This document shows positions 2-58,632 of a DNA stretch of 64,000 bases, in pieces. Made by a program: the position numbers and the translations under genes. The notes beneath the pieces were generated by a model. That model was not told where the DNA came from. It was given only the letters and a program-made list of their open reading frames with translations, and searched no databases. The stretch covers positions 186,001 through 250,000 of the IMG/VR virus record IMGVR_UViG_3300023296_000874. One strand, 5' to 3'. How positions within the stretch are numbered: the stretch's first letter is position 1; each line of letters opens with the position of its first letter.

Positions 2-301
2 CTTCTTCTCCTCGCCTCCCTTTCCTTGCTCGTCGGCTGTTCCAACCTCACCGCTGGTGAAGTGACGGAGGCAGAGACCACGGGTATTGCCCACTGCGAG
101 AAGCTCCACGCGGGCTCCACCTGCGCCGCTGCCTGTCAGGAGCGGGACACGGATGAGGACGGCTTTGTCCGTTGCAGCCTCACCGCCACGCCTGATGGCT
201 CCACTGTGGCTCAGGACCTTCCGGCCCTCGAGTGCGCCTACGGCAAGACGTGGAGCTGGGCGAAGGGCTGCCGTCAGCCCAACAAGGCCGTCACGCGCTG
301 A
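2..301 (+). CDS. Small Cys-rich lipoprotein (5' truncated by window edge)
   Basis: Frame open from base 2: LLLLASLSLLVGC = hydrophobic signal peptide plus lipobox Cys. Confidence 0.55.
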   Translation, partial: LLLLASLSLLVGCSNLTAGEVTEAETTGIAHCEKLHAGSTCAAACQERDTDEDGFVRCSLTATPDGSTVAQDLPALECAYGKTWSWAKGCRQPNKAVTR

Positions 302-737
302 GCACGTTCCGGATGATGCGCTCAATGAAGGGCACCATCTTGTAGCGTTTGAGATCGTCCACACCCACCCAGGCGATTGCGATGTTCTCGTGATCTGTCA
401 GGCGTGGCTTCCCTCTGTAGCCCTCACTCACGAAGGGATGCAGGATGCCGAGCTCCGGACCCATGTTGATGGACCGGAGCTTTCGCAGTCTTCCGGGTCG
501 GATCCCAGCTTCCTCAACGAGCTCACGCACCGCGCCTTGCTGTGGCGTTTCTCCGGCATCCACTCCACCGCCCGGTAGGTTCCACGCCAAAGGCATCCAA
601 GGGGCTGTACCGCCGCGCTGTAGTAGGAGGACCTTGCCGTCTTCCACTACGACAGTGACGGCTGAGTGCTCAAGCTGAACAGCCGCCGCCAGCTTGCGGA
701 TCTCACTTGATGTGGATGTTTTCTGTGGTGCTGGCAT
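291..737 (-). CDS. NUDIX hydrolase with short N-terminal extension
   Basis: Nudix box GGVDAGETPQQGAVRELVEEAG; WNLPGG upstream. Confidence 0.9.
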   Translation of the reverse strand: MPAPQKTSTSSEIRKLAAAVQLEHSAVTVVVEDGKVLLLQRGGTAPWMPLAWNLPGGGVDAGETPQQGAVRELVEEAGIRPGRLRKLRSINMGPELGILHPFVSEGYRGKPRLTDHENIAIAWVGVDDLKRYKMVPFIERIIRNVLSA

Positions 738-762
738 GGGTGCCCTCCTAACTGGGATGTGA

Positions 763-778
763 CTACAAAGGGATCATG
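763..778 (-). promoter_or_regulatory. Conserved 16-bp motif (putative late promoter)
   Basis: + strand ctacaaagggatcatg, 26 nt upstream of the NUDIX start. Confidence 0.65.
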
Positions 779-985
779 CCACAATGGAGTATGGAAGCTG
801 AGCACCCCTACAAGCAGTTCATCCTCGAGTGTCTGGCCTTGCTGCATCTACCCAGTGGAAAGTGGGAGGAGATTGCCAAGGACAGGAACTGGGCACTGCT
901 ATGGGCGTGGGGATGTGATCCATGCGAGGCGGTAGTCACCTACCTTCATGACAGCATGAGGGAGTACGATGTGATAGATGAATAA
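776..985 (+). CDS. Hypothetical protein
   Basis: 69-aa ORF filling a gap; no motif. Confidence 0.4.
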   Translation: MPQWSMEAEHPYKQFILECLALLHLPSGKWEEIAKDRNWALLWAWGCDPCEAVVTYLHDSMREYDVIDE

Positions 986-1043
986 GCTCGACATTCCGAC
1001 ACTCGTCCAAATCCTTGTCGAATGACTTGAACCGGAGGCCCAC

Positions 1044-13393: not shown

Positions 13394-13576
13394 TCAGCCC
13401 TCCTTCGGTGCCTTGCCGGTGAAGAGCTTCTTGATGGTGGGTAGCGTCTCACCGGGAGCGGGTAGCTCCAAGGGGGCCGCGACGTCATCAGTCGAAGTCT
13501 CACGAGGCTTGTGGTACCGGTTGACGTAGTCGTCGGCCAGCTTGATTGCCAACGAAGCGATGCGATCTGTATCCAT
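13394..13576 (-). CDS. Small hypothetical late protein
   Basis: GGAGG RBS; late motif 21 nt upstream; IASLAIKLA leader. Confidence 0.6.
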   Translation of the reverse strand: MDTDRIASLAIKLADDYVNRYHKPRETSTDDVAAPLELPAPGETLPTIKKLFTGKAPKEG

Positions 13577-13596: not shown

Positions 13597-13612
13597 CTAC
13601 AAAAGCATCATG
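13597..13612 (-). promoter_or_regulatory. Conserved 16-bp motif (putative late promoter, variant)
   Basis: ctacaaaagcatcatg; overlaps the CCA-gene TGA. Confidence 0.55.
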
Positions 13613-14822
13613 AAAGCATCTTGCTCACTGCCAGGTCCAGCTTGCGAGCCGAGATGTCCGGCTCTTGCAGGATGAGCCCACGCGCGTACGTCACGGGGAG
13701 GGATCGGTCCCGCCCTTGGAGGCTGTTCTCGTTGATGTGGCGCATGTTGTCCACCGGGGGCTTCGTGAGCTTCTTGAGGAAGTCCTGTGCGTCATCCCTT
13801 TGCATCGGCGTGGTCAGCTCCCGCAGGCGCTTCTGCTGGTCACGGTCAAGGAAGGTGATGGGGCTCTTGACGCTCAGGCCCAAGTCCATCAGGTCGAGCA
13901 GTAGCGCAACATCGCGGTCCTTGAGCTGGCGGCTCAGGTACGTGGCGAAGGGGCGCTGCTCCTGAACCATCTCAGCGATCACGTCGAGCAGTCCGAGCTT
14001 CTTCATCAGCTTGAGCGCATCCCGCGCCGTTGCTTCGTTCAGCACGTTCTCAACCAGGATCGTAGCGATTGCCTCCCACGGAGCCCGCTTCATGGCGGGT
14101 GCGTTGCGCTTGATGCTGGCAGCGAGGTCCTTGGGGATCTTGAAGCCGTACTTCGCAACGAACTTGATGGCGCGGAGCAGTCGTGTGGGGTCGTCGCTGA
14201 AGACGACGTCAGGGTCACGGGGGCAAGCCATCGTGCGGCTCTCCAGGTCGCGGATGCCGCAACCCGTGAGGTCGATCACTTCAGCCTTCTCCGGTCCGTT
14301 CGTCAGGTCCATCAGCCGCCAGAGCAGCGTGTTGAACGTGAACTCGCGGCGGTAGATGTCCTCCTCAACCGTGGCGTCTTCAACCATGTGAGGCTTGTAC
14401 CCCTGGCCTCCGGCTCCACCGTAGGATTCCTTTCGGGAGTTGGCGATCTCGATCACCTCCCCCTTCATCTCCACCCCGTCCAGAGTCCACTCACCCTTCA
14501 CCGTGATGATGGCGACGTTGTACTGGTTGGTCGTCAGGTCGGTCTGAGTGGGGATCGCCCGCTCAACTTCCTTGGCGAACCACTCGGAGTTCTTCTTGCC
14601 GCCCAAGGCCACGGAGTCGACTACGACGTCGATGTCCTTGATGGGCATGTCGATCAGGAAGTTCCGCACTGCACCACCGACAACGTACACGTGTCGGCCT
14701 ACACCCAGCCGGGTGGACAGGCGGGCAAGGAACTTCATCAATGCGTGAGAACGCTTGACAGCGTTTGCTGTCACGAGCTCTGCGGCGAGTTTGTCTGCGA
14801 TGTCTGTCATGGTGTACCTCAC
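13608..14822 (-). CDS. Class II tRNA nucleotidyltransferase (CCA-adding / PolyA_pol family)
   Basis: VYVVGGAVRN..KDIDV (DxD), EDIYRREFTFN, FSDDPTRLLRAIKF; no HD domain; no PAP upstream signature. Confidence 0.85.
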   Translation of the reverse strand: MRYTMTDIADKLAAELVTANAVKRSHALMKFLARLSTRLGVGRHVYVVGGAVRNFLIDMPIKDIDVVVDSVALGGKKNSEWFAKEVERAIPTQTDLTTNQYNVAIITVKGEWTLDGVEMKGEVIEIANSRKESYGGAGGQGYKPHMVEDATVEEDIYRREFTFNTLLWRLMDLTNGPEKAEVIDLTGCGIRDLESRTMACPRDPDVVFSDDPTRLLRAIKFVAKYGFKIPKDLAASIKRNAPAMKRAPWEAIATILVENVLNEATARDALKLMKKLGLLDVIAEMVQEQRPFATYLSRQLKDRDVALLLDLMDLGLSVKSPITFLDRDQQKRLRELTTPMQRDDAQDFLKKLTKPPVDNMRHINENSLQGRDRSLPVTYARGLILQEPDISARKLDLAVSKMLS

Positions 14823-15219: not shown

Positions 15220-15990
15220 TCACTCCGCTGTGTAGGGATCGTTCCAGTCGATGACGCCCTTTTCCATCAGCCCAACGGCCTTGGGGACGTTGCCTGGGTC
15301 GATCACTGGCATGTCGCGGCGGTCAGGAGCCCAGCTCGGAACCGTCTTGGTCACCAGCTTGGCGTTGCCTGAAATCTCCGCAATGCCGTCTTCCACGCTG
15401 CCAAAGGAGCTCTCGAGTACTTCTTTCACGTCGTCCGCGCTCCATGGGAACTCGCCACGGATGCCTGATACGGTCATCTCCAGCAGCATCTTCCGCACCT
15501 TGGTCTCAGTGAAGCTACCGAGGTTGCCCTTGCCGGGCTTGCCGTTCCTGATGTGGAACACTCCCACGGTGAGGAGGTTCAGAACCCTCAGTAGCTCTGC
15601 TCCTTTGAGGGCCGCTCCGTAGCCTCCAACCTTGCCGCTCTTGCCTGACGCCAGGATGGTTGCCGCCCAACGGTGGTGTCCATCCATGATGTGACGGTCC
15701 TTGGATACGAGCGCACCCAGATCACCGCCTACCTTGCCGGTCTTGAGCATGAACAGGGCCATGCCCACAGCCTTCTCAAGCACCATCGACGTCTGCGAAG
15801 GCTTCAGTGCGGCTGCCGCCCAGGAACCCTTGGACACCTGGATCTTGTCGTCCCTCTTGTCCCCATCTTCCCAGCCGCTCTGGACGAGCAGTTTGGCGAT
15901 GGAAGGGTCGATGGAACTCAGCTCGGAGGCATCTTCGTACTGCTGTTCGAAGCCGCGTGCCAAACGGGCGATCTCTTGGGATAGTCTCAT
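15220..15990 (-). CDS. ParB/Srx-like domain protein
   Basis: LKPSQ ... ALVSKDRHIMDGHHRWAA. Confidence 0.7.
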   Translation of the reverse strand: MRLSQEIARLARGFEQQYEDASELSSIDPSIAKLLVQSGWEDGDKRDDKIQVSKGSWAAAALKPSQTSMVLEKAVGMALFMLKTGKVGGDLGALVSKDRHIMDGHHRWAATILASGKSGKVGGYGAALKGAELLRVLNLLTVGVFHIRNGKPGKGNLGSFTETKVRKMLLEMTVSGIRGEFPWSADDVKEVLESSFGSVEDGIAEISGNAKLVTKTVPSWAPDRRDMPVIDPGNVPKAVGLMEKGVIDWNDPYTAE

Positions 15991-32460: not shown

Positions 32461-32469
32461 GTCATCTCC

Positions 32470-33090: not shown

Positions 33091-33150
33091 GTTATTGCTC
33101 CGAATGGGTTGAAAGCCTTTATAGGTTTTACGAAAACACTTATGTGTCGT

Positions 33151-33168: not shown

Positions 33169-33188
33169 AAAGTCTGATCAGCTCAGGA

Positions 33189-34415: not shown

Positions 34416-34457
34416 GATATTTGCCTCCGAAAGGTTGTCCAACTCGGACGATAGGGG

Positions 34458-34473
34458 CTACAAAAGGATTATG
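34458..34473 (-). promoter_or_regulatory. Conserved 16-bp motif (consensus copy)
   Basis: ctacaaaaggattatg, 43 nt upstream of 34415. Confidence 0.75.
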
Positions 34474-34509
34474 AGAGTCTCGAGAGGAGATGGAGTGCAG
34501 CCCAGTACT

Positions 34510-34839: not shown

Positions 34840-36323
34840 TCAGGGGAGCCGTAGCTGAAGAGGTTTCCCTTGTAGATGAGCTGTCGGGCTACATCCATGG
34901 GGATCTTCCGGATTCCCGCTGCCTTGCCAATGGCATTGAGGTAGTCGAGTGGTGATTCAAAAGGTCCGGTGCCGCCTACCTTCGAGATGGCCTCGTTGGC
35001 TCTACGGCTAAGGGTCTCACCGCCGCGCTCGGCGTCAATGAAGTGGCTCAGGGCCAGGATCTCACGTCCGGAGAAGCCCTTGTCGGAAAGGCTCTTCCAA
35101 CCGGCAGTCTTGACACTCACCAACCCCTCGTAGAGGCGGTAGAGCATCAGGTCGCCACCGTAGCCAGCGTATCGGCTCTTGAAAGCGGAGAAGGCAAAGG
35201 TGCTGCGCACCAAGTTCTCGTTTCCGTTTTCCTTGCCGGTGTCTTGCTTGCCCTTCTCAACTCCACGCATCTCGTCACGGAGCTGGTTCCGTACCTGATC
35301 GCGGATCACCTGCTTCATGTCGTCGGTGATGTCGTCAATGGGGCTCTTGTCCGGTGTCGCGGGCGCTGCGGGCTTGTCCTCGCCGCCTTCCCCGTCTCCA
35401 CCATCGCCGCCCGCATCGTCGAAGTTAAAGCCACCCTGGCGGTGTACGAAGCTCTCAACCTTGTTGAGCGCTGCCTGTACCTCCGTGAGGTCAGAAGCGG
35501 CACGCTGCATAGCGTCTGCGTCCACAACGTTCACGGTCTCGAACGCAGCCTTGATGGTCTCAGCACTCACATCAGCGGCTTCCAGGATGTTCCGCATGAC
35601 GGCACCCTTGAAGGCTGGGTTGCCTACCCACGAGGCCTCAATGAATGTGACGCTGTCCTCATCATCCTTGTGGCCGCAGAGCTCGGCAATCTTGCGACGC
35701 TTACCCTTCTTGTCGAAGAAGTGGTTGCCCTTCATGTACTTGATGTGCTCGCACATCTGAGTATCGTCTTCAGCTACGTTTCCACACTTCGTGCAGACGG
35801 TGTAGTCAACCGTGCAACCCATGGAGAGGGTCGTGATCTCGCCACTCTTGATGTCCCGTACCAGGTCCTTGTGCTTGCGGTCCGTGGCTACGAGGATGTC
35901 AACGTAGACGGTCTCGCCAAGGTCGCGGGCTACTGCGTCAACAATCTTGCCCTTGCTCAGCTCGGGAATTTGAATGTGCTCAACGTAGTTCTCTGCACCA
36001 CGGAAGGTTCCGTAGGTGGCGAGGAGCAGGTCACGCTCCCAGGCATCTTCGTTGTTGTTGACGTACTTCTCAGTCTTCGCGGTGATCACGAAGGGCCAAC
36101 CACGGTCGTTGACGGGAGAAGCTTCTACGTCAACAGAGGCGATGATCGTGCAGTGCGTGAGAAGGAACTTCTCTGGGTTGTACTTGCTGGCGATCATGTC
36201 CGCGCCAGCCTGTCGGCTCATCTTGGAGCTGCCCGTCATGCCGTCCTTGCGAACAGCGGTCCAGTCATCAGCCTCGAGAGAGTGCCGAACAATCTTCGCC
36301 TTTGCGTATCGAAGCATTGACAT
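34836..36323 (-). CDS. Prohead (maturation) serine protease with Zn-finger insert
   Basis: NNNEDAW, NYVEH (His), TLSMGC (Ser), CTKCG...CEH, FIEASWVGNPAF. Confidence 0.75.
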   Translation of the reverse strand: MSMLRYAKAKIVRHSLEADDWTAVRKDGMTGSSKMSRQAGADMIASKYNPEKFLLTHCTIIASVDVEASPVNDRGWPFVITAKTEKYVNNNEDAWERDLLLATYGTFRGAENYVEHIQIPELSKGKIVDAVARDLGETVYVDILVATDRKHKDLVRDIKSGEITTLSMGCTVDYTVCTKCGNVAEDDTQMCEHIKYMKGNHFFDKKGKRRKIAELCGHKDDEDSVTFIEASWVGNPAFKGAVMRNILEAADVSAETIKAAFETVNVVDADAMQRAASDLTEVQAALNKVESFVHRQGGFNFDDAGGDGGDGEGGEDKPAAPATPDKSPIDDITDDMKQVIRDQVRNQLRDEMRGVEKGKQDTGKENGNENLVRSTFAFSAFKSRYAGYGGDLMLYRLYEGLVSVKTAGWKSLSDKGFSGREILALSHFIDAERGGETLSRRANEAISKVGGTGPFESPLDYLNAIGKAAGIRKIPMDVARQLIYKGNLFSYGSPE

Positions 36324-40147: not shown

Positions 40148-41752
40148 TCAGAAGCGCTCTTCCCCCGCGCTCTCCTTGATTTTCAGTCCAAGGTGCTCAA
40201 CGACGATATCCAGAAGGTTGGATTTCTCCGCGAGCTGTCCGCCAATGTCACCCAAGGCGTTTCGAATCGCCTCGTTGAAGTTGGCGTCATTGAGCGTGAA
40301 TGCATCGCGCTGGAGCTTCTCTTCCACGTCAGCAGCGTCGATGTTGAAGAGGTCGAGGATGAAGCTCACGGGCAAGCTTCCCTTCTGGTACAGGTCGAAC
40401 AGGGCGCTGAAGACGTCCTGGTTGTCGGCCAGTGCCATACGGTTGAAGCTCAGGCGCGGGTAGATGGGCTTGTCGTATCCCCACGCATCCTTCTCCACGA
40501 ATCCCATCTTGATTGCTACGGGCTTGAAGAGGAAGTCCTCAACGTACTCCTGAACCATCATGCGGTAGTTCATGAAGCGCTCGTTCATGACGTGCAGGCT
40601 CAACCGGTTGCCGGTGAACGTACCTTCGCCAGTGAGCAGCTCGAGCGTCACGCCAAGGCCAACCATGAGCTGACGGTCCGTGATGTCGTACTCGTTGCTC
40701 AGGTCAAGCAGGCGGTCGTTGCTACCGTACTCTTCCCAGTTCACCTGGTAGTTGGCAACAATGGAGAAGTCAGGGTCCATCAGGGCAAGGTCCACCATCT
40801 CGCGGAGCTCATCAACCTGCATTTCGTCAAGCCCCTCTCCCCACACGACGCGCTTCGGGGTCATGTTGCGGCTTGCGATACTTGTCTGAGCCTGACGTAG
40901 CTTGTCGCGGTACAGCAACACGCGCAGGCACCGTTCCAAAATGGAGGAGCCAAACTTGCTGCGAGGCCTACGCCTACGAGCAAGGTGGTAGCAGAAAGAG
41001 CCCTGCATGGGATCGGAGTCCAGGGGGAGGTTCTCTCCCATCTGGATGTACTCCACGATCTCGGGCGGCATCTTCTCAACCTTGCGCATGGCAAGGGGGT
41101 CAACCTGGGCGTCACGCACGGCGCGACGGTCTTCTTCCGAGGGTACGAACTCGATGTCTACTTCGTCGGAGAAGCTGTAGCCCTTGACGTCAACCTGATC
41201 GGTCTCAAGGATGGTGAGCTTGCGCCACCCACGGTAGTCTTCGCCTTCCTTGTCATCGTCCTCAGCGAAGATGAAGACGTTGCCGTCCAACCAGTAGAGG
41301 TGCGTGATCTCGTGCAGGCGTCGTGTGAGCCTGAGATCATCCACCATCTTCTGAAAGTAGGCCATCACCTTGTCAGCGGTCTCCTTGTCCTCACATTTCG
41401 GCTTGGAGAGGCGGACCTTGCTCAAGGGGATCTCGGTCAGGATGTCGAGTGCCTGCCCAACCATGGGGTCAGTCTCGTAGTAGTGCCTGAACCACTCGTG
41501 CTTCTCACGGTCACTCTGAGGCAGCTCGAGGAAGTCCGTGCTGAGCTGAGGGCTGAAGAAGTTGAATCCAGAGCTCTGGATTACACCACCACCCGGAGCA
41601 CCAACACGAGTGTTGAACTGTACGCCATTGGTGGAGCGGGCAACACGCTTCAGACGTCGAGCGATGACTTGATCATTGCCACGTCGGGAGATTGTGGGTC
41701 CGGGTGCCGGAGCACCAGATCCACTACTTTCGTTGTTGTTGTCGTCAGGCAT
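40148..41752 (-). CDS. Portal protein
   Basis: 534 aa between TerL and protease; YYETDPMVGQALDI, YWLDGNVFI, GSSILERCLR.L...DKLRQAQ.SIA.R..TP, GLGVT..LL.GEG. Confidence 0.85.
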   Translation of the reverse strand: MPDDNNNESSGSGAPAPGPTISRRGNDQVIARRLKRVARSTNGVQFNTRVGAPGGGVIQSSGFNFFSPQLSTDFLELPQSDREKHEWFRHYYETDPMVGQALDILTEIPLSKVRLSKPKCEDKETADKVMAYFQKMVDDLRLTRRLHEITHLYWLDGNVFIFAEDDDKEGEDYRGWRKLTILETDQVDVKGYSFSDEVDIEFVPSEEDRRAVRDAQVDPLAMRKVEKMPPEIVEYIQMGENLPLDSDPMQGSFCYHLARRRRPRSKFGSSILERCLRVLLYRDKLRQAQTSIASRNMTPKRVVWGEGLDEMQVDELREMVDLALMDPDFSIVANYQVNWEEYGSNDRLLDLSNEYDITDRQLMVGLGVTLELLTGEGTFTGNRLSLHVMNERFMNYRMMVQEYVEDFLFKPVAIKMGFVEKDAWGYDKPIYPRLSFNRMALADNQDVFSALFDLYQKGSLPVSFILDLFNIDAADVEEKLQRDAFTLNDANFNEAIRNALGDIGGQLAEKSNLLDIVVEHLGLKIKESAGEERF

Positions 41753-42125
41753 TCATATTCTCCTGCTGGGCGGCGATTGCGGCGCGTCGAGCAGCTTGCT
41801 GCTCTCTGCGTGCGGCGACCCGTTCTATTTCTTTGTTTCGTGCGGCTATCTGATCTTCGGGCCTTGTGTAGTCAGGGACCGAAACAGATTGCAGAGCTCC
41901 CAAGGCAGAGCTCACAGCCCGCTTGGTTCTCCGCAACCTAATGATGAAGCCGCTGTGGGCGGTGGTCATCTTCCTGTATAGAGGGTCCTGCCGTGCGGCC
42001 CTGTCGTCAGCTACTGCCAACTGCTCAATCTGAGCGTGAATCTCAGAGAGCCTGGATGCTGCCGCCACCGCGTCTGCGCGTGCGGATGCCTCTTGAGCAA
42101 TCAGTTCCAGAACACCATCGGCCAT
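41745..42125 (-). CDS. Hypothetical coiled-coil protein
   Basis: Overlaps the portal start; alpha-helical composition. Confidence 0.55.
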   Translation of the reverse strand: MADGVLELIAQEASARADAVAAASRLSEIHAQIEQLAVADDRAARQDPLYRKMTTAHSGFIIRLRRTKRAVSSALGALQSVSVPDYTRPEDQIAARNKEIERVAARREQQAARRAAIAAQQENMNA

Positions 42126-42718
42126 CAGAACAACCGGATATCGACACCGAGCGTATTGTCGTTGTCAGTAGAGGGAATCATCCACACCGTTCCAACCTGG
42201 ATCGGTGTGCCAATCCCTGCCGCTGTAGCATCGGCAAGGGTGGTTAGGTATCCCCTGTCACTGACGTAAACCGCGTCATTCAGTGAATAGGAAAGTGCGA
42301 TTCCTGAGGAGGTCCGATCTCCAAAGGTGTACTTCTCGAACATCTTGAAGACGAAGGTCCCATCGAACATCATGGTAACGACGCGCGTGCTCGACGGCTT
42401 GTAGGAAGAGTAGTTGTACTCCGTGCTCCGGAGGTCAAAACTGCCCGGCGTCTGAACTTGAGGGTGAAAGTCAGATCCACGAATGAGGAACCCAGTGGCG
42501 GCAGTGCCATCACTCTGTCCCACCACTCGGATGTTCTTGACGTTGTTGGCCGGTCCGAAGGAGTTGGAGGTGTACATCACCCACTGCCCTCCGCGCCAGC
42601 CATCAGCACCATCACCACCACTCGACGCAAGCGTGTCATTCACGTACACGGGGACGTTCATCCCCTTGTACTGAATTACAACGTCATGATTCTGCTGATG
42701 GTTGTCTCTTACTCCCAC
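42125..42718 (-). CDS. Putative structural protein (decoration-like beta fold)
   Basis: YSLNDAVYVSDRGYLT..IQVGTV..P echoes the 32470..33090 C-terminus; AGGAG RBS. Confidence 0.5.
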   Translation of the reverse strand: MGVRDNHQQNHDVVIQYKGMNVPVYVNDTLASSGGDGADGWRGGQWVMYTSNSFGPANNVKNIRVVGQSDGTAATGFLIRGSDFHPQVQTPGSFDLRSTEYNYSSYKPSSTRVVTMMFDGTFVFKMFEKYTFGDRTSSGIALSYSLNDAVYVSDRGYLTTLADATAAGIGTPIQVGTVWMIPSTDNDNTLGVDIRLF

Positions 42719-42744
42719 GGTAGCTCCTCGTCAGCCAGTTGGGT

Positions 42745-43584
42745 CTACTCGCCCTCTTCTTCTGTCGCTGCAGCCATCACCCACTCATCGTACTCCTTCT
42801 CCCAACCGGAGGGGCGCTTGCGCAGACGTCCGAGGTAGAGCACCTGGCCCGTAGTCGGGTTCATGGAGCGTGGGTAGGTTGCACGCTGCTGCGGGAAGAG
42901 GCTGAAGTACCAGTCCTTCACCGCGCCACTCTTGGCGTCCTGGGTCTTGAGTACGAGTCCGGTGTAGTAGATGCGCGAGCGCTCTTCGCCCTTGTCGGAA
43001 CCACGGTCCACGTAGTCCTGCACCAGCTTGAGGTTGTCTGCACTCGGAGGAGGTCCGCCCTTCTTCGAGAAGTACACCACTTCGAAGATCTTGGAAGCGC
43101 GGCTTCGGTCTCCGTCCTCACCGGGCTCGCCGTTGCTTGTAGCTGCGGCTGCGGGCGTGTGGCGGTAGAGGCCAACCTTGGAGCCCTTGGTACCACCCTC
43201 AACCCGAAGGATGTTGGGCAGGCGGGGATCCTCGAAGTTCAGGATCACGTCCTCACCATCAACCTCGTCGATAGTGGCAACAGCGTCGTGAAGAGGGCCG
43301 AGGAGGTCCTGAAGGTGTCCGGGCACCTTGCGCTTGTCGATGCGAACCATCTCACCGCGCGCCAGTGGCTGTCCACGCTTCGAGGGCTTGTACTCCTTGT
43401 GGGGCACACCCTGACGCTCAAGGAATGTGGCGCACTCACGCTGAGATACGCGGTCGTTCTTCATGATGCACCATTCCACGAACTTCTCAGTCTCGGGCTT
43501 GATGGCGACCTTGTCGTGGGCTTCTACGTCGGTAGAACCCAGCACTTCCAGTGCAAGGCTCTGGGCGAGCTTATCATAGTTCAT
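42745..43584 (-). CDS. Hypothetical late protein
   Basis: First gene after the late motif at 43631. Confidence 0.6.
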   Translation of the reverse strand: MNYDKLAQSLALEVLGSTDVEAHDKVAIKPETEKFVEWCIMKNDRVSQRECATFLERQGVPHKEYKPSKRGQPLARGEMVRIDKRKVPGHLQDLLGPLHDAVATIDEVDGEDVILNFEDPRLPNILRVEGGTKGSKVGLYRHTPAAAATSNGEPGEDGDRSRASKIFEVVYFSKKGGPPPSADNLKLVQDYVDRGSDKGEERSRIYYTGLVLKTQDAKSGAVKDWYFSLFPQQRATYPRSMNPTTGQVLYLGRLRKRPSGWEKEYDEWVMAAATEEEGE

Positions 43585-43630
43585 GTTGGGATCTCCCGAA
43601 AGGGGGTAGTAGGTGTCTCATCTCAGCCCG

Positions 43631-43646
43631 GTACAAAAGGAATATG
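43631..43646 (-). promoter_or_regulatory. Conserved 16-bp motif (putative late promoter)
   Basis: gtacaaaaggaatatg, 47 nt upstream of 43584. Confidence 0.7.
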
Positions 43647-43658
43647 TCCGGTCTGGGA

Positions 43659-45470
43659 TCAAAAGAACTTGCGCTTGCGCACGTACATGTTCTTGCGTGC
43701 TTTCTTGAGCTGGTGCGAACGGTGTGTGGAGTAGCCCTTGCCGTTCCCACGTAGTCCGGGGTTCCGGTTGCTCATGCCGTGAACCACTCGAGCGAACTTC
43801 TTGTCGCCAATGCGTTCCTGAGCGAGCCAAATGGCGCGGGCCAGGGCGTCAGCCTGATCGTCGAACCTGCCAGGCAGGTTGGGAGCAGCCACCTCAATCT
43901 GGTACTTGCTGAGGCGCTTCTCCTGAAGGCTGAGCAGCTCTTTGATGTAGTCGCAGTGCTCGTCCCCCTCTTCAATGGGCCAATCGAACAGGCGGATCTT
44001 CTTGTCGAGCATCAGGAGCTTGAAGGCTTGGTACTTCTTGGAGTTCTTGTCGCGGCTGGCGTACTCCATCTCAAACTGCTGGAGTCCGCGCTTGCGGAGT
44101 GCCTGCTCAAGAGGAAGGCCTTCTCGCTGGTCAAAGGAGCCGCGCCAGATGTAGAACTTCTTGCTCAGATCGAAGATCCACTGCGCAATACTCTCGAAGT
44201 CAAGCTGGTCCATGTCCTTGTAGGGGCCAACGCCAGCGTACCGAACGTCCATGTAGTCGAGTACGATCTGGTCGCCCTCAAGATGTACGATGGAGATCGC
44301 CGTACCGTTGTTGACAAGCCCGATGTCAACGCCCATGAAGTGAGGTACGCGAGTAGCGCCGCCACCACGGGGTCGGAGGTCAGGGTCGATGCACTGGAGC
44401 AGGTCGTCTTCCCTGCGGATCCAACCGTGGAGTCGGTCGGAGAACTCAGCTCCGAACTCAACGAGGAAGTTGGCGGGGTCTTCCTTGTACTTCTTGCGGA
44501 GGTACTTACCTGCAATCGTGGGGTTGATCTCCCACGAAGGTGCCTGGATGCAGAGGCGTCCTTCAGAGCGGCCCTCCATTCCCTGCGTGAACAGCTTGTA
44601 GAACTTCCCGGCCTTGTTGAGCGGCGAGGAGATGCAGATCACCTTTCCCTCAGGCTCGCCCGTTTTGGGGTCCTTGAAGGTAGCCGTCGAAGGCGTTGCG
44701 GCCTCGTAGCACTCTTCAGCGGAGCTCTGGCCCTCTGCCACGAAGTGAGCAAACTCGTCGAACACGCATACGATGTTGGCGGGTCCACGGAGGCCTCGTC
44801 CAATAGCCGGACGGAACAGGAGCTCGATGGATCCCTTGGCGTCCGGGCCGTAGCGGTCAATGTCGGCCTGGGTACGGAACACCATGCCTTCAGCGGTGTC
44901 ACTGGCAATGAACGGCTCGAAATAGCGGCACTTCGTCAGGTAGCCGCGCGCCACGTTGTAGAGCATGGAAGCCTGGCGGGCGCTGGTTGCTACAGCACTG
45001 ATGCTGATGCGGCCCACTTCGAGCATCTTGTAGTGGTCGTGCGGATTCACGCGGGCAAGGAGCTTGTAGATCTCGTAGGCGCAGATCATCGAGGTCATTG
45101 CTGACTTAGAGCCACGGCGTCCAACCGACAGGAGGAGGTCGGTGTAGATCTCGCCCTGCTCCTTGACGTTGCAGCGCCCCTCGTTGTGAAGGTAGCGGAG
45201 GAACTCCTTCTCGCTGAGCTCGTACTTCAGTTCCATCATGAACTGGTCGTGTACGGGAATGCCGTGGAAGAGCTTTCCGTCGAGCATCACCTCAGGCTTC
45301 TCAATGCTGAGAGGTACGCCGTAGAACAGCTTGAGTAGCCAACGCTGAGCGGGCCAGAGTCGAGTGTTGAGTCCCCAGGTTGACTCGCAGAACGTGACGA
45401 TGTCAACGAAGTCCTCGTTGTCCTTGTCAGGCTTGCTGAACTCCTGGAGGATGGAGGTAACTGTGTTCAT
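43659..45470 (-). CDS. terL: Terminase large subunit
   Basis: LWPAQ (Q motif), VGRRGSKS (Walker A), CVFDEFAHF (Walker B), ISSP, FMGVDIG and DDQADA nuclease acidic residues. Confidence 0.92.
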   Translation of the reverse strand: MNTVTSILQEFSKPDKDNEDFVDIVTFCESTWGLNTRLWPAQRWLLKLFYGVPLSIEKPEVMLDGKLFHGIPVHDQFMMELKYELSEKEFLRYLHNEGRCNVKEQGEIYTDLLLSVGRRGSKSAMTSMICAYEIYKLLARVNPHDHYKMLEVGRISISAVATSARQASMLYNVARGYLTKCRYFEPFIASDTAEGMVFRTQADIDRYGPDAKGSIELLFRPAIGRGLRGPANIVCVFDEFAHFVAEGQSSAEECYEAATPSTATFKDPKTGEPEGKVICISSPLNKAGKFYKLFTQGMEGRSEGRLCIQAPSWEINPTIAGKYLRKKYKEDPANFLVEFGAEFSDRLHGWIRREDDLLQCIDPDLRPRGGGATRVPHFMGVDIGLVNNGTAISIVHLEGDQIVLDYMDVRYAGVGPYKDMDQLDFESIAQWIFDLSKKFYIWRGSFDQREGLPLEQALRKRGLQQFEMEYASRDKNSKKYQAFKLLMLDKKIRLFDWPIEEGDEHCDYIKELLSLQEKRLSKYQIEVAAPNLPGRFDDQADALARAIWLAQERIGDKKFARVVHGMSNRNPGLRGNGKGYSTHRSHQLKKARKNMYVRKRKFF

Positions 45471-46838: not shown

Positions 46839-47174
46839 CTACTGAGTGGGTTCTACGCCGCCCGTTGATTGCTCAGCGGAGGGTCCGGGGGGAGGTGTAC
46901 CTGTCTGGTACTCGCTCGGGATGTTGTATCGGGCAAGGTTGGAGATGTCATCGTAGAGGGGATGGTCTTCAATCTCACTGAGGCGCTTGTCCTCGTGATC
47001 CTCCCCCTCAATACCGTCCCGAGAGTCCTCAAGCATCTTCTGTACTTGCTTGCCTTCCGATTGGAACAGCTCACGCTCATGCTGGGGAATGTCAGAATCG
47101 TCGACGAGTCCGTCGCCGTACTCGGGCGCGGCCTGAATCAAACGGGCGAGGCGGTGTAGGCGGTCAGAGATCAA
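46839..47174 (-). CDS. Small hypothetical late protein
   Basis: RLHRLARLI leader; overlaps the upstream stop. Confidence 0.55.
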   Translation of the reverse strand: MISDRLHRLARLIQAAPEYGDGLVDDSDIPQHERELFQSEGKQVQKMLEDSRDGIEGEDHEDKRLSEIEDHPLYDDISNLARYNIPSEYQTGTPPPGPSAEQSTGGVEPTQ

Positions 47175-50003: not shown

Positions 50004-50548
50004 CAGAGCTCACCATCACGTGCTTCGAGGTACTCGTTGTACCCTTCGATGAGCCTTCGTGCTGTCCCATCCACAAGGGATTCGGTACCGGTCAGAAGGT
50101 GGTCCATCAGCTTGGTCAAACCGCGTGGCGATAGCGCCCCTGTACCAAGGATACTGAGTTCAAGTGCGGATGCGTGAACTGCGTCTTCTACTACCTCAAG
50201 CGCCAGTGCTGGTGCATGTACGGCGAAGAAGTCTCTACTCTGATTCTTTCGGATGGTCTGTGTGAGCGCTCTATTGAGGTGCGCGTTCAATCTTGAAGTT
50301 GCAAGTACGAGCACGCTGCTTCTGAGCTCTGCGTCGAACAGAGTATCGAACTGGTCATCAGCACCCGTGAGGTTGCGCTTCAGGATTGCTCCCTCGTCGT
50401 CCTCGATGTCACCCCGACCCTCGTCCTCGTTCCAGGAGCCGTAGGGGCCTGGGCCGTAGCCACGCTCACGAACGGCGGGTCCGGACTGCGGCTGTGTGCC
50501 GAAGCTCCGTTCCGAAACCATTCCGCCCCATGCCTTACGATCCTTCAT
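50003..50548 (-). CDS. Hypothetical protein
   Basis: Operon-filling ORF; ATG at 50548. Confidence 0.55.
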   Translation of the reverse strand: MKDRKAWGGMVSERSFGTQPQSGPAVRERGYGPGPYGSWNEDEGRGDIEDDEGAILKRNLTGADDQFDTLFDAELRSSVLVLATSRLNAHLNRALTQTIRKNQSRDFFAVHAPALALEVVEDAVHASALELSILGTGALSPRGLTKLMDHLLTGTESLVDGTARRLIEGYNEYLEARDGEL

Positions 50549-51083
50549 TGACGATCTCCTCAATGAACTCGTCTTCGGCGTAGCCCTCGGGGTCTTCCTT
50601 GATCTCCTCTACGTCCTCGATGATCTCCTCAACCTGCTCCTTCTGCTTCTTGGGTAGGTTGTCCTTGATCTCACGCCAGTGCGGGGCGTTCACCTCGTCG
50701 AACAGGGTGTCCTGCACTCCGCTCAAGGTGTTCAATGCGTTGGTCAGCTCCGCACGCATGTCGGTGACGCTCTTGTTGTAGCCCATGCCCCCGAGCTTGC
50801 CGTCAGGGGAGAGGTTGAAGCTCTTGATCCGGCTGAAGGTGTCAACCACGGAGCTTGTGTGGCCGAGTGCAACTGATACCTGCCAGAGCAGCTTGGTCAA
50901 GGTGACATAGTCTTCCTTGCGGAAGTTGTGGTTCTCAAGGAAGTCTCGGCCTGCGCTGAGGTTGTCCTTGATGTGGCGAATTTCACCTGCGGTTCGCATC
51001 AGCGAAGCACTGCGCTCCAGCGGAGTCTCAATGAACTCTGCTGCCAACTTCTCTGCCGCCGCGATGTCGTCGAAATCAGACAC
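50535..51083 (-). CDS. Hypothetical protein
   Basis: GAGGTGG RBS before GTG 51083; AEKLAAEF leader, RSAS/RTAG motifs. Confidence 0.6.
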   Translation of the reverse strand: MSDFDDIAAAEKLAAEFIETPLERSASLMRTAGEIRHIKDNLSAGRDFLENHNFRKEDYVTLTKLLWQVSVALGHTSSVVDTFSRIKSFNLSPDGKLGGMGYNKSVTDMRAELTNALNTLSGVQDTLFDEVNAPHWREIKDNLPKKQKEQVEEIIEDVEEIKEDPEGYAEDEFIEEIVNEGS

Positions 51084-56300: not shown

Positions 56301-56307
56301 GACAGAC

Positions 56308-57435
56308 ATGGAACCCGTAACGATCATCCTTCTCACCATCGGCGGCATCGGCTCCCTCCTCGCGGCGGGAGCGGGTGGTGTAGCGGTGGGCGTAGCTGGG
56401 GCAAAAGCCTCAATGCCCGAGCCCGAGCCCGTGGACTCTGACCCGGTTGGGGCCATCCGTCTTCAGGAAGACCTCGACTACGCCCAGCGTCGGTTGGCGG
56501 ATGCTCATGAAGACCTGGCGCGTGCCGGGGGTGACCGGGACCGCTACAGGACGATGGCTGAATCTCACGACATTCACATGCCGGAGGTAGCCGAGACTCA
56601 GATGGTGGAACGGAGCGTGTGGAAAGACCGCCGCTACCGTGCCCACCCACGAGACATCCTCACCAACCTCGCAACGGACCTGGAGGAGTACGCAGGATCT
56701 GACCTCACGCTCACCATCTCCATCTCAGGCAAGGGTGGCTGGGCAGACCATCTCAAGGAGCGATGGTTCAAGACCGAGAGCCAGCGTGATCGCTACGGGC
56801 ACTACAAGGAAGTGAAGGTGCCCATCAAGGAGATCAAGGGATTCACCTTCGAGGGACCGCCAGACCGAGTGATCGACCACCTCCGCACCCTCCTCACGGA
56901 TGACGACACGGGCCTCGTGACCGTTGCGGCGGTTGACTGTATGGACACTGCGTCAGGCTCCGACCGATTCGTAGGCCCGACCGACAAGATTGCCCTCGCG
57001 GGCAAGCCTTCCGCCAGGAAGGCGACCGTGGTGCCTCAGGCGAAGTTCTGGAGGGACTCCGACTCCCCGCTCCTCGTGAAGGCGAAGCTCACCGTGCGCG
57101 AAGAGGTGAAATCCCCACCCGCGCCGGAGGTGCAGATCGTTGAGGTGCTGGTGGTTCAGGAGCGCATTGTGGAGCGCATCGTTGAGAAGCCGGTGATTGT
57201 GGCCGTGCCCTCCGGTACGGAGCAGGACTTGTGCGGCCACACCCGCGAGGAGATCTCAGACCTCATCTCCGTAGAGCTTGAGCTTGCTCAGCTTGAGGGC
57301 GGACTCAAGCGAGTAGCGACGGCCTCACTCGCAAGAGCGGAGGCCGAAGTAGAGGCGGCACGCCCGGCTGATGATGTAGACGAGAGGCTCAGGAGGGCTC
57401 GGGCAGCGTCCCTTGCTCGGCAGCCTGGATCCTGA
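56308..57435 (+). CDS. N-terminally anchored membrane protein with coiled coils
   Basis: Hydrophobic N-terminus; heptad segments. Confidence 0.6.
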   Translation: MEPVTIILLTIGGIGSLLAAGAGGVAVGVAGAKASMPEPEPVDSDPVGAIRLQEDLDYAQRRLADAHEDLARAGGDRDRYRTMAESHDIHMPEVAETQMVERSVWKDRRYRAHPRDILTNLATDLEEYAGSDLTLTISISGKGGWADHLKERWFKTESQRDRYGHYKEVKVPIKEIKGFTFEGPPDRVIDHLRTLLTDDDTGLVTVAAVDCMDTASGSDRFVGPTDKIALAGKPSARKATVVPQAKFWRDSDSPLLVKAKLTVREEVKSPPAPEVQIVEVLVVQERIVERIVEKPVIVAVPSGTEQDLCGHTREEISDLISVELELAQLEGGLKRVATASLARAEAEVEAARPADDVDERLRRARAASLARQPGS

Positions 57436-58015
57436 TGAGTAGATCCGGCGTGTAGCGATCCGCCAACAGCAAGGAGGCGGAAGGCAACGCGCGGGTTTCA
57501 GCCTGGAGCTGCTCCTCATCATCCATGAGGATCGCGGCACGGCTGTGAACCGTAGGCCCGGATTCCACAACTGGGGGCTCGAGGTACGGCTCCGGGTTCG
57601 TGTTGGCGAGGCTCTGCCAGTGCGCCATGACTCCGGGGTGTACGCCGCTACGGGACTCGTCGATGAGTTCCTGAGCGCGCTCCTTCATCCACGGTGCCCA
57701 CGAGGCCTCGTACTCAGTCACCTTCTCCGCAGCAGTTCCGTACTGCGGATACATGAACTGGTCAGCGGAGAGGATGGCGAAAGGTCCCTTCAGGGAGCGG
57801 ACGCCACGCATGAAGCTCAGCCCGGCCCAACCCGCCTGGAAGCCGCTGTTACCCATCTGGCCCGCGCCGTAGTTGAACGCTGCCTGGGCAATGAGACCCA
57901 AGGCCGCTGCCGAGGTGTTGTAGTCGTGAGGGTGCTCGATGGCGCTCTTGACGTAGGCGAGGAATTCAGCCTCCGTCTCGGGCCACGGTGCAGGAGCTTC
58001 TGGGTCAAACGGCAT
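57389..58015 (-). CDS. Hypothetical protein
   Basis: GGAG RBS before ATG 58015; HDY.TS...SGFQAG pattern seen in phage hypotheticals. Confidence 0.6.
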   Translation of the reverse strand: MPFDPEAPAPWPETEAEFLAYVKSAIEHPHDYNTSAAALGLIAQAAFNYGAGQMGNSGFQAGWAGLSFMRGVRSLKGPFAILSADQFMYPQYGTAAEKVTEYEASWAPWMKERAQELIDESRSGVHPGVMAHWQSLANTNPEPYLEPPVVESGPTVHSRAAILMDDEEQLQAETRALPSASLLLADRYTPDLLIRIQAAEQGTLPEPS

Positions 58016-58065
58016 CAAGGTTCTCCGGGTAGGAAGGTACCCATCAAACACCAAGAACCATCAAG

Positions 58066-58632
58066 TCACCTTTCGAGAGCTACCTTCTTGCCGTGGTTGC
58101 GCTCATCCTTCACCCAACGCCAGAAGCGTCCGATGGGGAACGCTTTGTGCTCACCCTCGCGGTAGAAGCCCGGTCGAGGGTAGTGCTTCTTGTAGGCCCC
58201 GATGGCTTCCTCTACAGAGTCGAAGCCGATCATCACCTTGTCCTCATCGAACCCGCCGTCAGGCATGTGCTGGTGAATGACAAGCACGAGTGAGCTGTCG
58301 TGGTTGGGGCCAACGTACACGTCAAGCAGGTCGCCGTCTGTGGCCTCTGTCCCCCTGATCTCGCCGTAGTGGTGGTGCATGTAGCGCCTCCACTTCTTGC
58401 CTTCAGGGTTGGTCTTCTCGCGGTACTGTCCGGCCTTGACCTCAATGTCAATCTCAAGCCCTTGGAAGTCCACGTAGCCAACGAACGGCTTCTTCTTGGC
58501 TGGCTCGACCTTCACCTTGTGGAACGAGTGCGGCACCTCAACGATGCCATCGTCAGAGGCTACACGCGCGGGACTCAGACGCATCCGAGCCGCCACGTTC
58601 GCAAGGTGGTTGATTGTGTCCTGGGTTACCAT
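58066..58632 (-). CDS. InPase-domain (inorganic pyrophosphatase-like) protein
   Basis: GLEIDIE..AG..R....GKKW...M..HYGEI.GT...DGD.LDVYVGP ... FDEDKVMIGF.S.EEA..AY. Confidence 0.75.
   Translation of the reverse strand: MVTQDTINHLANVAARMRLSPARVASDDGIVEVPHSFHKVKVEPAKKKPFVGYVDFQGLEIDIEVKAGQYREKTNPEGKKWRRYMHHHYGEIRGTEATDGDLLDVYVGPNHDSSLVLVIHQHMPDGGFDEDKVMIGFDSVEEAIGAYKKHYPRPGFYREGEHKAFPIGRFWRWVKDERNHGKKVALER

What the first reader, a model, noticed from the sequence alone, without database searches (positions are those of the whole stretch)
291..58632. Candidate capsid-targeting leader grafted onto late enzymes (packaged enzyme cargo system)
Seen: many minus-strand late ORFs begin with, or carry, a short amphipathic helix of the form [I/A/L]-x-[K/R/H]-[L/V]-A-x-x-hydrophobic. 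Examples at or near the N-terminus are NUDIX 291 (EIRKLAAAV), 13394 (RIASLAIKLADDY), CCA enzyme (DIADKLAAEL), ParB-like (EIARLARGF), the basic protein (SLAIRLAMH), 42745 (DKLAQSLALEV), 46839 (RLHRLARLI), 50535 (AEKLAAEF) and InPase (INHLANVAARM). Internal examples are AEHLAAHY (36323), AIRLALQF (39162), AGKVAMRW (26487), IAKLATYY (58626) and IRVLASAI (49812). In NUDIX, CCA, ParB and InPase the segment lies outside the catalytic fold. The second NUDIX (30217), GlnRS, RNA ligase, NadD and MtnB/D lack it. Established: T4 internal proteins use an N-terminal capsid targeting sequence that the prohead protease removes. Inference: this phage tags a set of nucleotide- and tRNA-handling enzymes for encapsidation and ejection at infection.
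Basis: partly seen in the sequence, partly recalled or inferred. Interest (0 to 1): 0.85.

Follow-up and report, generated by a model that had tools for sequence, protein, structure and literature searches.

The report
Shared N-terminal tag on phage enzymes
Eight unrelated proteins of an uncultivated huge phage, including four nucleotide- or tRNA-handling enzymes, start with the same short helix far more often than chance allows; it may be an address label that loads them into the virus particle, but that function is not shown.

Summary
The window is part of a 257-kb uncultivated huge phage related to Bacillus phage G. The core observation holds. The pattern hydrophobic-x-[K/R/H]-L-A-x-x-hydrophobic lies at residues 3-20 of 8 of 52 minus-strand proteins and 0 of 23 plus-strand proteins. 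An unbiased pattern search recovers it as the top N-terminal pattern, beyond shuffled and internal-segment nulls and reached by 1.25% of draws from a relative's real N-termini. The base rate in a related 485-kb phage is 5 of 590.

"Grafted" is only partly right. The CCA helix is ancestral and part of the fold. The InPase, ParB-like and 50535 helices are internal in longer homologues.

The motif nevertheless recurs on other, non-homologous N-termini in two syntenic relatives. It switches to R-V-A in another lineage, in step with that lineage's CCA. A related phage clade carries a clear 30-residue N-terminal leader on 33 unrelated protein bodies. InPase, ParB and ART domains are classes already predicted to be virion-packaged.

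Best reading (about 0.4): a lineage-specific docking helix, probably for virion loading. Coincidence (about 0.3) and a different partner (about 0.2) remain open. No cleavage site or virion evidence was found.

The parts
291..737 (-). NUDIX-1 hydrolase, 148 aa; motif IRKLAAAV at residues 13-20 (nt 678-701)
   Evidence: Pfam NUDIX covers residues 24-144. ATG with AGGAGG Shine-Dalgarno; the 148-aa call is confirmed independently. Orthologue P0137 keeps RIRKLAIAV. LR745208 NUDIX homologues lack any N-terminal helix. Coordinates verified.
13394..13576 (-). 60-aa protein; motif AIKLADDY at residues 10-17 (nt 13526-13549)
   Evidence: The L008 orthologue (57% identical) has ARKLAENH, a near match. 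It is the best-scoring window N-terminus against the long-leader PSSM.
13608..14810 (-). CCA-adding enzyme / tRNA nucleotidyltransferase, 400 aa; motif ADKLAAEL at residues 5-12 (nt 14775-14798)
   Evidence: Pfam PolyA_pol covers residues 45-197. 48 of 63 homologues have a ~21-residue N-terminal helix, consensus RVAxRF. In the AF2 model residues 4-34 form one helix, pLDDT 76/88/97 for the first three 10-residue blocks.
15220..15990 (-). ParB/sulfiredoxin-like protein (invariant DGHHRW), 256 aa; motif IARLARGF at residues 7-14 (nt 15949-15972)
   Evidence: 478 homologues, many with the domain internal in 500-1150-aa proteins. Alignments. The closest homologues do not keep the motif. AF2 helix H2-10 has pLDDT about 64.
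42745..43584 (-). 279-aa protein just downstream of terminase; motif YDKLAQSL at residues 3-10 (nt 43555-43578)
   Evidence: The L015 orthologue (49% identical) has IIANNLAKEF, keeping the helix but not the motif. The non-homologous gene in the same slot in L013 starts with ...LQDKLAQEY.
46839..47174 (-). 111-aa acidic protein (TTG start); motif LHRLARLI at residues 6-13 (nt 47136-47159)
   Evidence: The L014 positional orthologue (32% identical) keeps MIS..L.RLAR as its best-conserved stretch.
50535..51083 (-). 182-aa protein (GTG start); motif AEKLAAEF at residues 10-17 (nt 51033-51056)
   Evidence: The LR745208 orthologue aligns from residue 1 without the motif. In L015 the homologous helix (ILAIRLASEH) is internal, just before residue 280 of a 457-aa protein. 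In L027 an ARVATRF helix plus an acidic linker precedes the domain.
58066..58632 (-). InPase (PF18823) pyrophosphatase-like protein, 188 aa; motif INHLANVA at residues 7-14 (nt 58591-58614)
   Evidence: Pfam InPase covers residues 52-174. The closest homologue, P0122 (325 aa), has the same helix after a ~150-aa N-terminal domain. The gene lies at the end of the AsnB/glycosyltransferase operon.
764..781 (-). Promoter-like 18-mer (consensus CTCATAATCCTTTTGTAG) 27 nt upstream of NUDIX-1. Sister sites: 13598-13615, 16591-16608, 25396-25413, 34459-34476, 40124-40141, 43632-43649
   Evidence: CYTTTGTA has 8 hits, all on the minus strand, against 1.1 expected; 0 of 100 shuffles reach 8. Seven sites lie 22-48 nt upstream of minus-strand gene starts.
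31567..36317 (-). Head-assembly core: major head protein 31567-32460, 206-aa protein 32470-33090, scaffold-like 33189-34415, protease-like 34836-36317. Putative receiving machinery (inferred)
   Evidence: phrog_2522 major head protein, 2e-55; phrog_18299 head maturation protease, 4e-13. No PDB sequence match for the protease.
40148..45470 (-). Portal (40148-41752) and large terminase (43659-45470), showing that the minus-strand block is the packaging and head module
   Evidence: phrog_16240 portal, 1.5e-35; phrog_17415 terminase, 1.9e-9. tblastn matches to phage G, Tunturi_5 and LR745208.

Best explanation
The eight N-terminal helices (hydrophobic-x-[K/R/H]-L-A-x-x-hydrophobic, residues 3-20) are a lineage-specific shared docking element. 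They form an exposed amphipathic helix through which unrelated accessory proteins made from the late strand bind one common phage partner. These proteins are NUDIX-1, the CCA enzyme, a ParB-like protein, InPase and four small or unknown proteins. The most likely purpose is incorporation into the assembling head, so that the enzymes travel with the DNA into the next cell, as with the T4 capsid targeting sequence. SHOWN: the enrichment, its specificity, its recurrence on other proteins in relatives, its lineage co-variation, and late-type promoter elements on three of the genes. INFERRED: that there is a common partner, that the partner is the prohead, scaffold or portal, and that the cargo is ejected. 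The tag is not uniformly a graft. In CCA and probably others, a pre-existing N-terminal helix carries or has drifted to the motif, and it is probably not cleaved off there.
For: STATISTICS. It is the top pattern in an unbiased enumeration, 8/52 against 0.16 expected, beyond shuffled and internal-segment nulls and reached by 1.25% of draws from LR745208 N-termini. The rate is 15.4% against 0.85% in 590 real N-termini of LR745208, and only the L-A core is enriched. None of 23 plus-strand proteins has it.

A-PRIORI REPLICATION. L007 carries it on ART-PolyVal, a 150-aa protein and a tail-fibre-like protein. L026, at 38% GC, carries it on two further small proteins plus near matches. None of these is homologous to the window's eight. 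That is 5/60 against 5/590, p = 0.001.

ADDITIONS. The first 45 residues of L007_15835 are absent from its L027 homologue, and L026_3001 has about 10 extra N-terminal residues. NUDIX-1's helix is absent from LR745208 NUDIX homologues.

CO-VARIATION. With CCA excluded, the window lineage shows bLA:bVA = 16:3 and the L009/L010/L027 lineage 1:6, p = 0.002, each matching its own CCA (KLA or RVA). LR745208 shows 23:23.

CONSERVATION. The motif is the best-kept part of 46839 against L014 and of NUDIX-1 against P0137.

CONTEXT. The shared promoter-like element links NUDIX-1, 13394 and 42745 with structural genes. InPase, DdrB-type ParB and ART domains are predicted to be virion-packaged, and InPase is found fused to portal and linked to NUDIX (PMC5512222). 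A portal PHROG profile contains a NUDIX domain.

PRECEDENT IN THE CLADE. A 30-residue N-terminal leader sits on 33 unrelated bodies, one of them ART-PolyVal.
Against: The CCA helix is ancestral (48 of 63 homologues) and continuous with the core helix. The homologous helices of InPase, ParB-like and 50535 are internal in longer homologues. Orthologues often lose the exact motif: 42745 in L015, 50535 in LR745208, and the closest ParB-like and InPase homologues. The head-module relatives L013-L015 show only one N-terminal hit, itself an orthologue, among their 42 called genes, 5 of them duplicated between L013 and L014. None of 22 further genes of the same phage has it. Only five positions are shared. 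No conserved cleavage site was found: A-x-E follows in 5/8 against 8/67 others, but this is confounded by the Ala-rich helix, and the protease's specificity is unknown. The motif and my residue-class vocabulary were chosen after seeing the data. There are no virion proteomics for this clade.
Confidence: 0.4

Rival explanations
1. Coincidence among ordinary N-terminal helices. Each protein family brings its own N-terminal amphipathic helix, and Ala-, Leu-, Lys- and Arg-rich helices happen to converge on the same five-position pattern. There is no common partner or function.
For: The helices are inherited within families: CCA in 48 of 63 homologues, and homologous helices internal in longer InPase, ParB-like and 50535 relatives. 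The motif is often not kept in orthologues at 36-65% identity. Nothing is shared outside the five positions except a helix N-cap. The motif was defined post hoc, and the most realistic null gives p of about 0.01, not astronomically small. This window was picked from a larger scan, so there is a look-elsewhere effect. L013-L015 and 22 extra genes are negative.
Against: It must also explain the a-priori replication in L007 and L026 (p = 0.001), the LA/VA co-variation with lineage (p = 0.002), the restriction to one strand (0 of 23), and the specificity for L-A over I/V-A or L-S.
Confidence: 0.3
2. A real shared tag with another purpose. The helix docks these proteins to some other common partner or place: the phage Cpn10/host GroEL chaperonin, a membrane surface, a replication or assembly factory, or an adaptor for timed proteolysis. 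It does not load them into the capsid.
For: The same statistics, replication and co-variation as the best explanation. No cleavage site was found, and in CCA the helix is continuous with the fold. InPase is not in a structural neighbourhood. The phage encodes Cpn10, and the T4 head-protein N-terminus is reported to direct proteins to GroEL (cited in PMC10052503).
Against: The enzyme classes involved are those predicted to be virion-packaged. Three of the genes carry the promoter-like element of structural genes. Several tagged genes lie inside or next to the head and packaging module.
Confidence: 0.22
3. Artefact: wrong start codons, spurious ORFs in 59%-GC DNA, or N-terminal composition bias create the apparent motif.
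For: Two tagged genes use TTG or GTG starts. My first gene caller mis-set the NUDIX-1 start.
Against: For three of the eight (NUDIX-1, InPase and CCA) the start is confirmed by the collection's own gene calls or database entries. The 46839 start is supported by its L014 positional orthologue in my own gene calls. The nulls use N-terminal composition and real N-termini. Codons vary between sites.
Confidence: 0.03

Closest known systems
T4 capsid targeting sequence (CTS) of internal proteins IPI-III and Alt
   Same: A short N-terminal peptide shared by otherwise unrelated, diverse accessory or anti-defence proteins of one phage (PMC3012670). The phage has a protease-like gene and a scaffold-like gene in its head module. 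An ADP-ribosyltransferase is among the tagged cargo in a relative; T4 Alt is the packaged prototype.
   Different: Only five positions are shared, apparently less than the T4 CTS, which was not compared here. No conserved cleavage site or linker follows. In CCA the helix is part of the fold and ancestral. Packaging was not tested. The phage is phage-G-like, not T4-like.
N-terminal propeptides of giant phage head proteins (SPN3US gp245 / phiKZ protease substrates)
   Same: Huge phages with many head-internal or ejection proteins; some propeptides are only 20-24 residues; the cleavage motif is A-X-E (PMC10052503). A-x-E follows the motif in 5 of 8 tagged proteins.
   Different: This protease has no detectable sequence match to solved structures and its specificity is unknown. 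The A-x-E excess is confounded by Ala-rich helices. SPN3US propeptides share no common targeting motif.
Polyvalent proteins of phages (Iyer, Burroughs, Anand, de Souza, Aravind 2017)
   Same: The same domain repertoire: InPase PF18823, ART-PolyVal in relatives, and a ParB-superfamily domain whose homologues sit inside 500-1150-aa multidomain proteins. These are predicted to be packaged and injected, and are encoded near late genes.
   Different: Here the domains are standalone single-domain proteins, each with a short N-terminal helix, and are not fused into one 2-15-domain polypeptide. No MuF, portal fusion or processing peptidase was seen.
Encapsulin cargo-loading peptides
   Same: A short terminal peptide on diverse enzymes that docks them inside an HK97-fold shell; a functional analogy only (my own knowledge).
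   Different: Encapsulin peptides are usually C-terminal and have different consensus sequences. Encapsulins have no portal, DNA or ejection.
30-residue N-terminal leader of LR745208-type huge phages
   Same: Strictly N-terminal (55 of 62 loci), on 33 unrelated bodies including ART-PolyVal, with several copies per genome. Its first helix has the core hydrophobic-x-R-L-A.
   Different: Much longer and much better conserved (70-90% identity). It is absent from the window's phage. The window's N-termini score only weakly against its PSSM, so homology is not shown. It also occurs once internally, in L010.

Membership tests
T4-type capsid targeting sequence system | A short N-terminal peptide shared by otherwise unrelated proteins of the same phage | tested here: met
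   8 non-paralogous proteins share h.bLA..h at residues 3-20. It is the top pattern in an unbiased enumeration, beyond shuffled and internal-segment nulls and reached by 1.25% of draws from a relative's real N-termini. Conservation is limited to five positions.
T4-type capsid targeting sequence system | The leader is followed by a conserved prohead-protease cleavage site and is removed | tested here: inconclusive
   There is no common site. A-x-E follows in 5/8 against 8/67 others, but this is confounded. [L/I]-x-E follows in 1 of 8. In CCA the motif sits in a continuous helix 4-34 with no linker. Protease specificity is unknown.
T4-type capsid targeting sequence system | The phage has a prohead protease and a scaffolding core | tested here: met
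   A protease-like protein at 34836-36317 (phrog_18299, 4e-13) and a scaffold-like coiled-coil protein at 33189-34415 lie next to the major head protein. The annotation is weak.
T4-type capsid targeting sequence system | Tagged proteins are present inside virions and ejected; the leader is sufficient to package a reporter | not testable with these tools
   The phage is uncultivated, and the Tunturi 5 paper, the only relative's paper read, holds no mass spectrometry.
T4-type capsid targeting sequence system | The leader is an addition, absent from homologues outside the system | tested here: inconclusive
   Met for NUDIX-1 against LR745208 homologues, and for L007_15835 and L026_3001. Not met for CCA, where the helix is ancestral. 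For InPase, ParB-like and 50535 the homologous helices are internal in longer homologues.
Phage polyvalent proteins (packaged multi-domain effectors) | Domains from the polyvalent repertoire (InPase, ART, DdrB-type ParB and others) | tested here: met
   InPase PF18823, 2.4e-36. ART-PolyVal in L007 and L087. A ParB-superfamily DGHHRW domain, although the DdrB-ParB subtype is not confirmed by Pfam.
Phage polyvalent proteins (packaged multi-domain effectors) | 2-15 effector domains fused in one polypeptide, often with a processing peptidase or MuF/portal | tested here: not met
   The window's tagged proteins are single-domain, 60-400 aa. Fused versions exist only among homologues.
LR745208-type 30-residue N-terminal leader family | Leader of the form TLRSKLIRLAHxNPxLRPxLLPLL at the N-terminus | tested here: not met
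   An HMM search of six-frame ORFs of the window, L004 and L006 gave nothing significant. The window's 257-kb contig is not among the 62 IMG/VR hits. PSSM scores are weak.

The most novel reading that the evidence does not exclude
Huge phages of the phage-G-like radiation use modular N-terminal address tags to load a changeable set of standalone counter-defence enzymes into the capsid for co-injection. The tags are a short K/R-L-A helix in this lineage, an R-V-A variant in another, and a 30-residue leader in a third. The enzymes include the CCA-adding enzyme, NUDIX, InPase, a ParB-like protein and ADP-ribosyltransferases. The tag co-evolves with a phage-specific receptor in the prohead. This would be an unfused, tag-based counterpart of polyvalent proteins.
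Probability: 0.3. Interest if true: 0.85.

Novelty: new variant of a known kind. Interest (0 to 1): 0.6.

Why it matters
If the helix is a loading tag, it gives a sequence-level way to predict which enzymes an uncultivated huge phage carries into the cell at infection. That set would include tRNA-repair (CCA) and nucleotide-signal-degrading (NUDIX, InPase) activities, which would act before any phage gene is expressed. It would also link the predicted packaging of polyvalent-protein domains to a concrete, testable peptide. It would suggest that capsid targeting by short leaders, so far worked out mainly for T4, is widespread and evolves quickly among huge phages. The long leader found in relatives, on 33 unrelated cargo bodies, offers a cleaner system for testing the same idea and could serve as a tool for protein encapsidation.

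Tried and rejected
1. DNA-level motif: rejected, because codon usage at the K/R-L-A sites varies.
2. Paralogy of the eight proteins: rejected.
3. Generic amphipathic N-termini: rejected as the sole cause, because only the L-A core is strongly enriched.
4. My EM motif finder overfitted (gamma went to 1) and was abandoned.
5. My first internal-segment null used overlapping samples and was discarded (redone).
6. A shared upstream context for all eight genes: none; most are translationally coupled.
7. T4-type L-x-E site at the end of the long leader: dropped, because the position is K-x-A with variable x.
8. Homology between the window motif and the long leader: not supported.
9. Function of 42745, 46839, 50535 and 13394: no hits in Pfam or NCBIfam; PHROGs (not run on 50535-51083 alone until) and the ESM Atlas (42745 only) also gave nothing.
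10. The protease against PDB sequences: no match.
11. IMG/VR has no close relative for CCA or TerL other than the window's own contig.
12. Megablast against deposited phages: no match.
13. No tRNA genes in the window.
14. Literature text search for the long leader peptide: no paper.

Full report
WHAT THE WINDOW IS. The window is 59% GC, has no tRNA genes, and codes at about 90% density. It is part of IMG/VR contig IMGVR_UViG_3300023296_000874, 257.5 kb. There is no nucleotide-level relative among deposited phages. At protein level the major head protein matches the 485-kb uncultured phage LR745208.1 (81%), Tunturiibacter phage Tunturi_5 (48%), Bacillus phage G (37%) and cluster-C-type mycobacteriophages (28%); terminase gives the same picture. 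The long minus-strand block holds a real head and packaging module: terminase 43659-45470, portal 40148-41752, a protease-like protein 34836-36317, a scaffold-like protein 33189-34415 and the major head protein 31567-32460. Tail-type proteins lie downstream. The 'ParB-like' label is reasonable, because the 15220 family has an invariant DGHHRW motif.

IS THE MOTIF MORE THAN CHANCE? A reversed-motif control gives 6. Because the motif was fitted by eye, I enumerated all 5-of-8-position patterns (exact residue or residue class) on N-terminal 30-mers. The best pattern was hydrophobic-x-[KRH]-L-A-x-x-hydrophobic, in 8 of 52 proteins against 0.16 expected, log10 P = -11.3. The same statistic never exceeded -8.2 in 120 shuffles or -9.3 in 200 sets of non-overlapping internal segments.

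With real N-termini of the complete LR745208 genome as the null, 1.25% of random 52-subsets reached the observed value, and all of those were driven by one leader family in that genome. The base rate of the exact pattern in LR745208 N-termini is 5/590. The enrichment is specific. Generic amphipathic N-termini are only mildly commoner here (58% against 42%). The L-A form is 18-fold enriched, while I/V-A and L-S forms are not. Codons differ between sites and the eight proteins are not paralogues. The 'basic protein' is a doubtful ORF, and IRVLASAI does not fit the motif.

IS THE HELIX A GRAFT? The answer differs by protein.

- CCA: 48 of 63 homologues, mostly from large contigs, carry an N-terminal segment of uniform length with consensus RVAxRF. 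In a pLDDT 94.5 model, residues 4-34 are one helix running into the invariant ALMKFL segment. The helix is therefore ancestral and structural, although solved bacterial enzymes lack it.
- InPase: the closest homologue (325 aa) has the same helix after a ~150-residue domain.
- ParB-like: many homologues are 500-1150-aa proteins with the domain internal. The preceding segment is homologous but rarely matches the motif. The helix is modelled at pLDDT about 64.
- 50535: the L015 homologue is 457 aa, with the homologous helix just before residue 280. The LR745208 orthologue aligns from residue 1 without the motif.
- NUDIX-1: the start is secure. The 68%-identical orthologue keeps the motif amid diverged flanks, and LR745208 NUDIX homologues have no N-terminal helix at all.
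- 46839: the motif is the best-conserved part of a 32%-identical positional orthologue.
- 42745: the L015 orthologue keeps the helix but not the basic-Leu pair. A non-homologous gene in the same slot in L013 also begins with ...DKLAQ....

REPLICATION AND CO-VARIATION. With the motif fixed a priori, I counted N-terminal hits using the collection's own gene calls.

- L007 (CCA 67% identical, syntenic) has it on CCA and on three other proteins: an ART-PolyVal ADP-ribosyltransferase, a 150-aa protein and a tail-fibre-like protein.
- L026 (38% GC, CCA 67% identical but without the helix) has it on two small proteins, plus several near matches in the variable gene cluster around CCA.
- None of these is homologous to the window's eight. 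The total is 5/60 against 5/590, p = 0.001.
- Two cases are true additions relative to homologues.
- Negative sets: 22 further genes of the same phage, the head-module relatives L013-L015 apart from one orthologue, and the distant L009, L010 and L027.
- In that distant lineage the N-termini favour [KRH]-V-A instead, on the 50535-like protein, on others, and on its own CCA. With CCA excluded, LA:VA is 16:3 in the window lineage against 1:6 there, p = 0.002. LR745208 is 23:23.

A CLEAR LEADER IN RELATIVES. LR745208 encodes nine proteins of 93-351 aa that share only a ~30-residue N-terminal leader, 70-90% identical, with a first-helix core of the form hydrophobic-x-R-L-A. One of these genes lies between the scaffold-like and major head protein genes. 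In IMG/VR the leader occurs at 62 loci on about 35 contigs. It is N-terminal in 55 of them and sits on 33 unrelated bodies, one of which is ART-PolyVal. It is not in Pfam or PHROGs, and no paper in the library contains the peptide. The window's phage lacks it, and its N-termini score only weakly against the leader's first helix. I therefore treat it as an analogue showing that leader-tagged cargo exists in this radiation, not as a homologue.

CONTEXT. An 18-nt element, consensus CTCATAATCCTTTTGTAG, occurs only on the minus strand: 8 core hits against 1.1 expected. It lies 22-48 nt upstream of structural genes and also of NUDIX-1, 13394 and 42745. This ties these three to structural-gene regulation. 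InPase, by contrast, ends a glycosyltransferase/AsnB operon. Iyer et al. 2017 predict that InPase, DdrB-type ParB and ART domains of phages are virion-packaged, and they note InPase fusions to portal and links to NUDIX. A portal PHROG profile includes a NUDIX domain. The T4 CTS and the SPN3US propeptides are the established models. I found no conserved cleavage site, and the protease could not be classified.

MECHANISM AND VERDICT. Shown: a specific, strand-restricted, lineage-restricted N-terminal helix motif on unrelated proteins, replicated in relatives and co-varying by lineage. Inferred: it docks these proteins to one phage partner, most plausibly in the prohead, so that they are packaged. 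I put this at about 0.4. Coincidence among inherited helices is about 0.3, a real tag with another partner about 0.22, and artefact about 0.03. The tag is partly carried on pre-existing helices, and removal by the protease is unsupported. If real, it is a new variant of a known kind (capsid-targeting leaders), and it would be an unfused counterpart of polyvalent proteins.

Noticed in passing
LR745208.1 genome coordinates 14562-15269, 20283-20732, 226068-226730, 274678-275658, 351543-351824, 351838-352536, 389893-390948, 398171-398575, 433279-433653; loci L028-L089: A ~30-residue N-terminal leader, consensus of the form M-T-T-L-R-S-K-L-I-R-L-A-H-x-N-P-x-L-R-P-x-L-L-P-L-L-K-x-A, sits on 33 unrelated protein bodies in about 35 huge-phage contigs, with several copies per genome. 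It is not in Pfam or PHROGs, and no text match was found in the literature library. One cargo is ART-PolyVal. One internal copy occurs in L010.
   Followed up: partly
window 764-781, 13598-13615, 16591-16608, 25396-25413, 34459-34476, 40124-40141, 43632-43649 (all minus strand); core also at 37475-37482: A conserved 18-nt element, CTCATAATCCTTTTGTAG, lies 22-48 nt upstream of minus-strand gene starts. The core has 8 hits against 1.1 expected, and none on the plus strand. It is probably a phage-specific (late) promoter.
   Followed up: partly
L015 and L026 (relatives from metagenomes): Relatives with 69-75% identical terminase and portal, and 67% identical CCA, have only about 38% GC against 59% in the window. 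That is a very large GC shift at high protein identity within one phage lineage.
   Followed up: no
window 50535-51083 and 51091-51915; L015:3564-4937; L010:13407-17486: The 50535-like domain is fused in L015 behind an N-terminal region that resembles the start of a 1359-aa protein with a Topoisom_I (type IB) Pfam hit in L010. The window's version looks like a split or truncated form.
   Followed up: no
window 1781-2446 (+), 4358-4651 (-), 4700-5179 (-): A PARP-domain (PF00644) protein, a Cpn10/GroES homologue and a fatty-acid-hydroxylase-family protein sit among the plus-strand accessory genes, according to the collection's precomputed Pfam hits.
   Followed up: no
window 34416-34835: A 420-nt gap between the scaffold-like and protease-like genes contains one promoter-like element (34459-34476) and only a doubtful Arg-rich ORF (34510-34839, minus strand). 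It may be regulatory or hold a small RNA.
   Followed up: no
L007:12177-12668, 12661-13605, 13586-15007 against window 12509-13393: In relative L007 the orthologue of the 294-aa protein 12509-13393 appears split, with a TnsA-like/intein-type insertion (faint Pfam hits). A LAGLIDADG/methylase gene is nearby. Mobile elements appear to invade this tail-distal gene.
   Followed up: no
window 291-737: NUDIX-1 also matches the C-terminal part (positions 517-624 of 794) of PHROG 15528, annotated as portal protein. Some phages therefore carry a NUDIX domain fused to their portal.
   Followed up: no
beyond window end (L006:1-9995) and window 58066-63972: The minus-strand block past 58 kb is a biosynthetic operon: a 5'-3' exonuclease, glycosyltransferases, an epimerase, a methyltransferase, a sulfotransferase-like protein, AsnB, a SWIM protein, a 793-aa protein and InPase. 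The true start of the 63250 gene lies beyond my first call (263 aa, not 240).
   Followed up: partly
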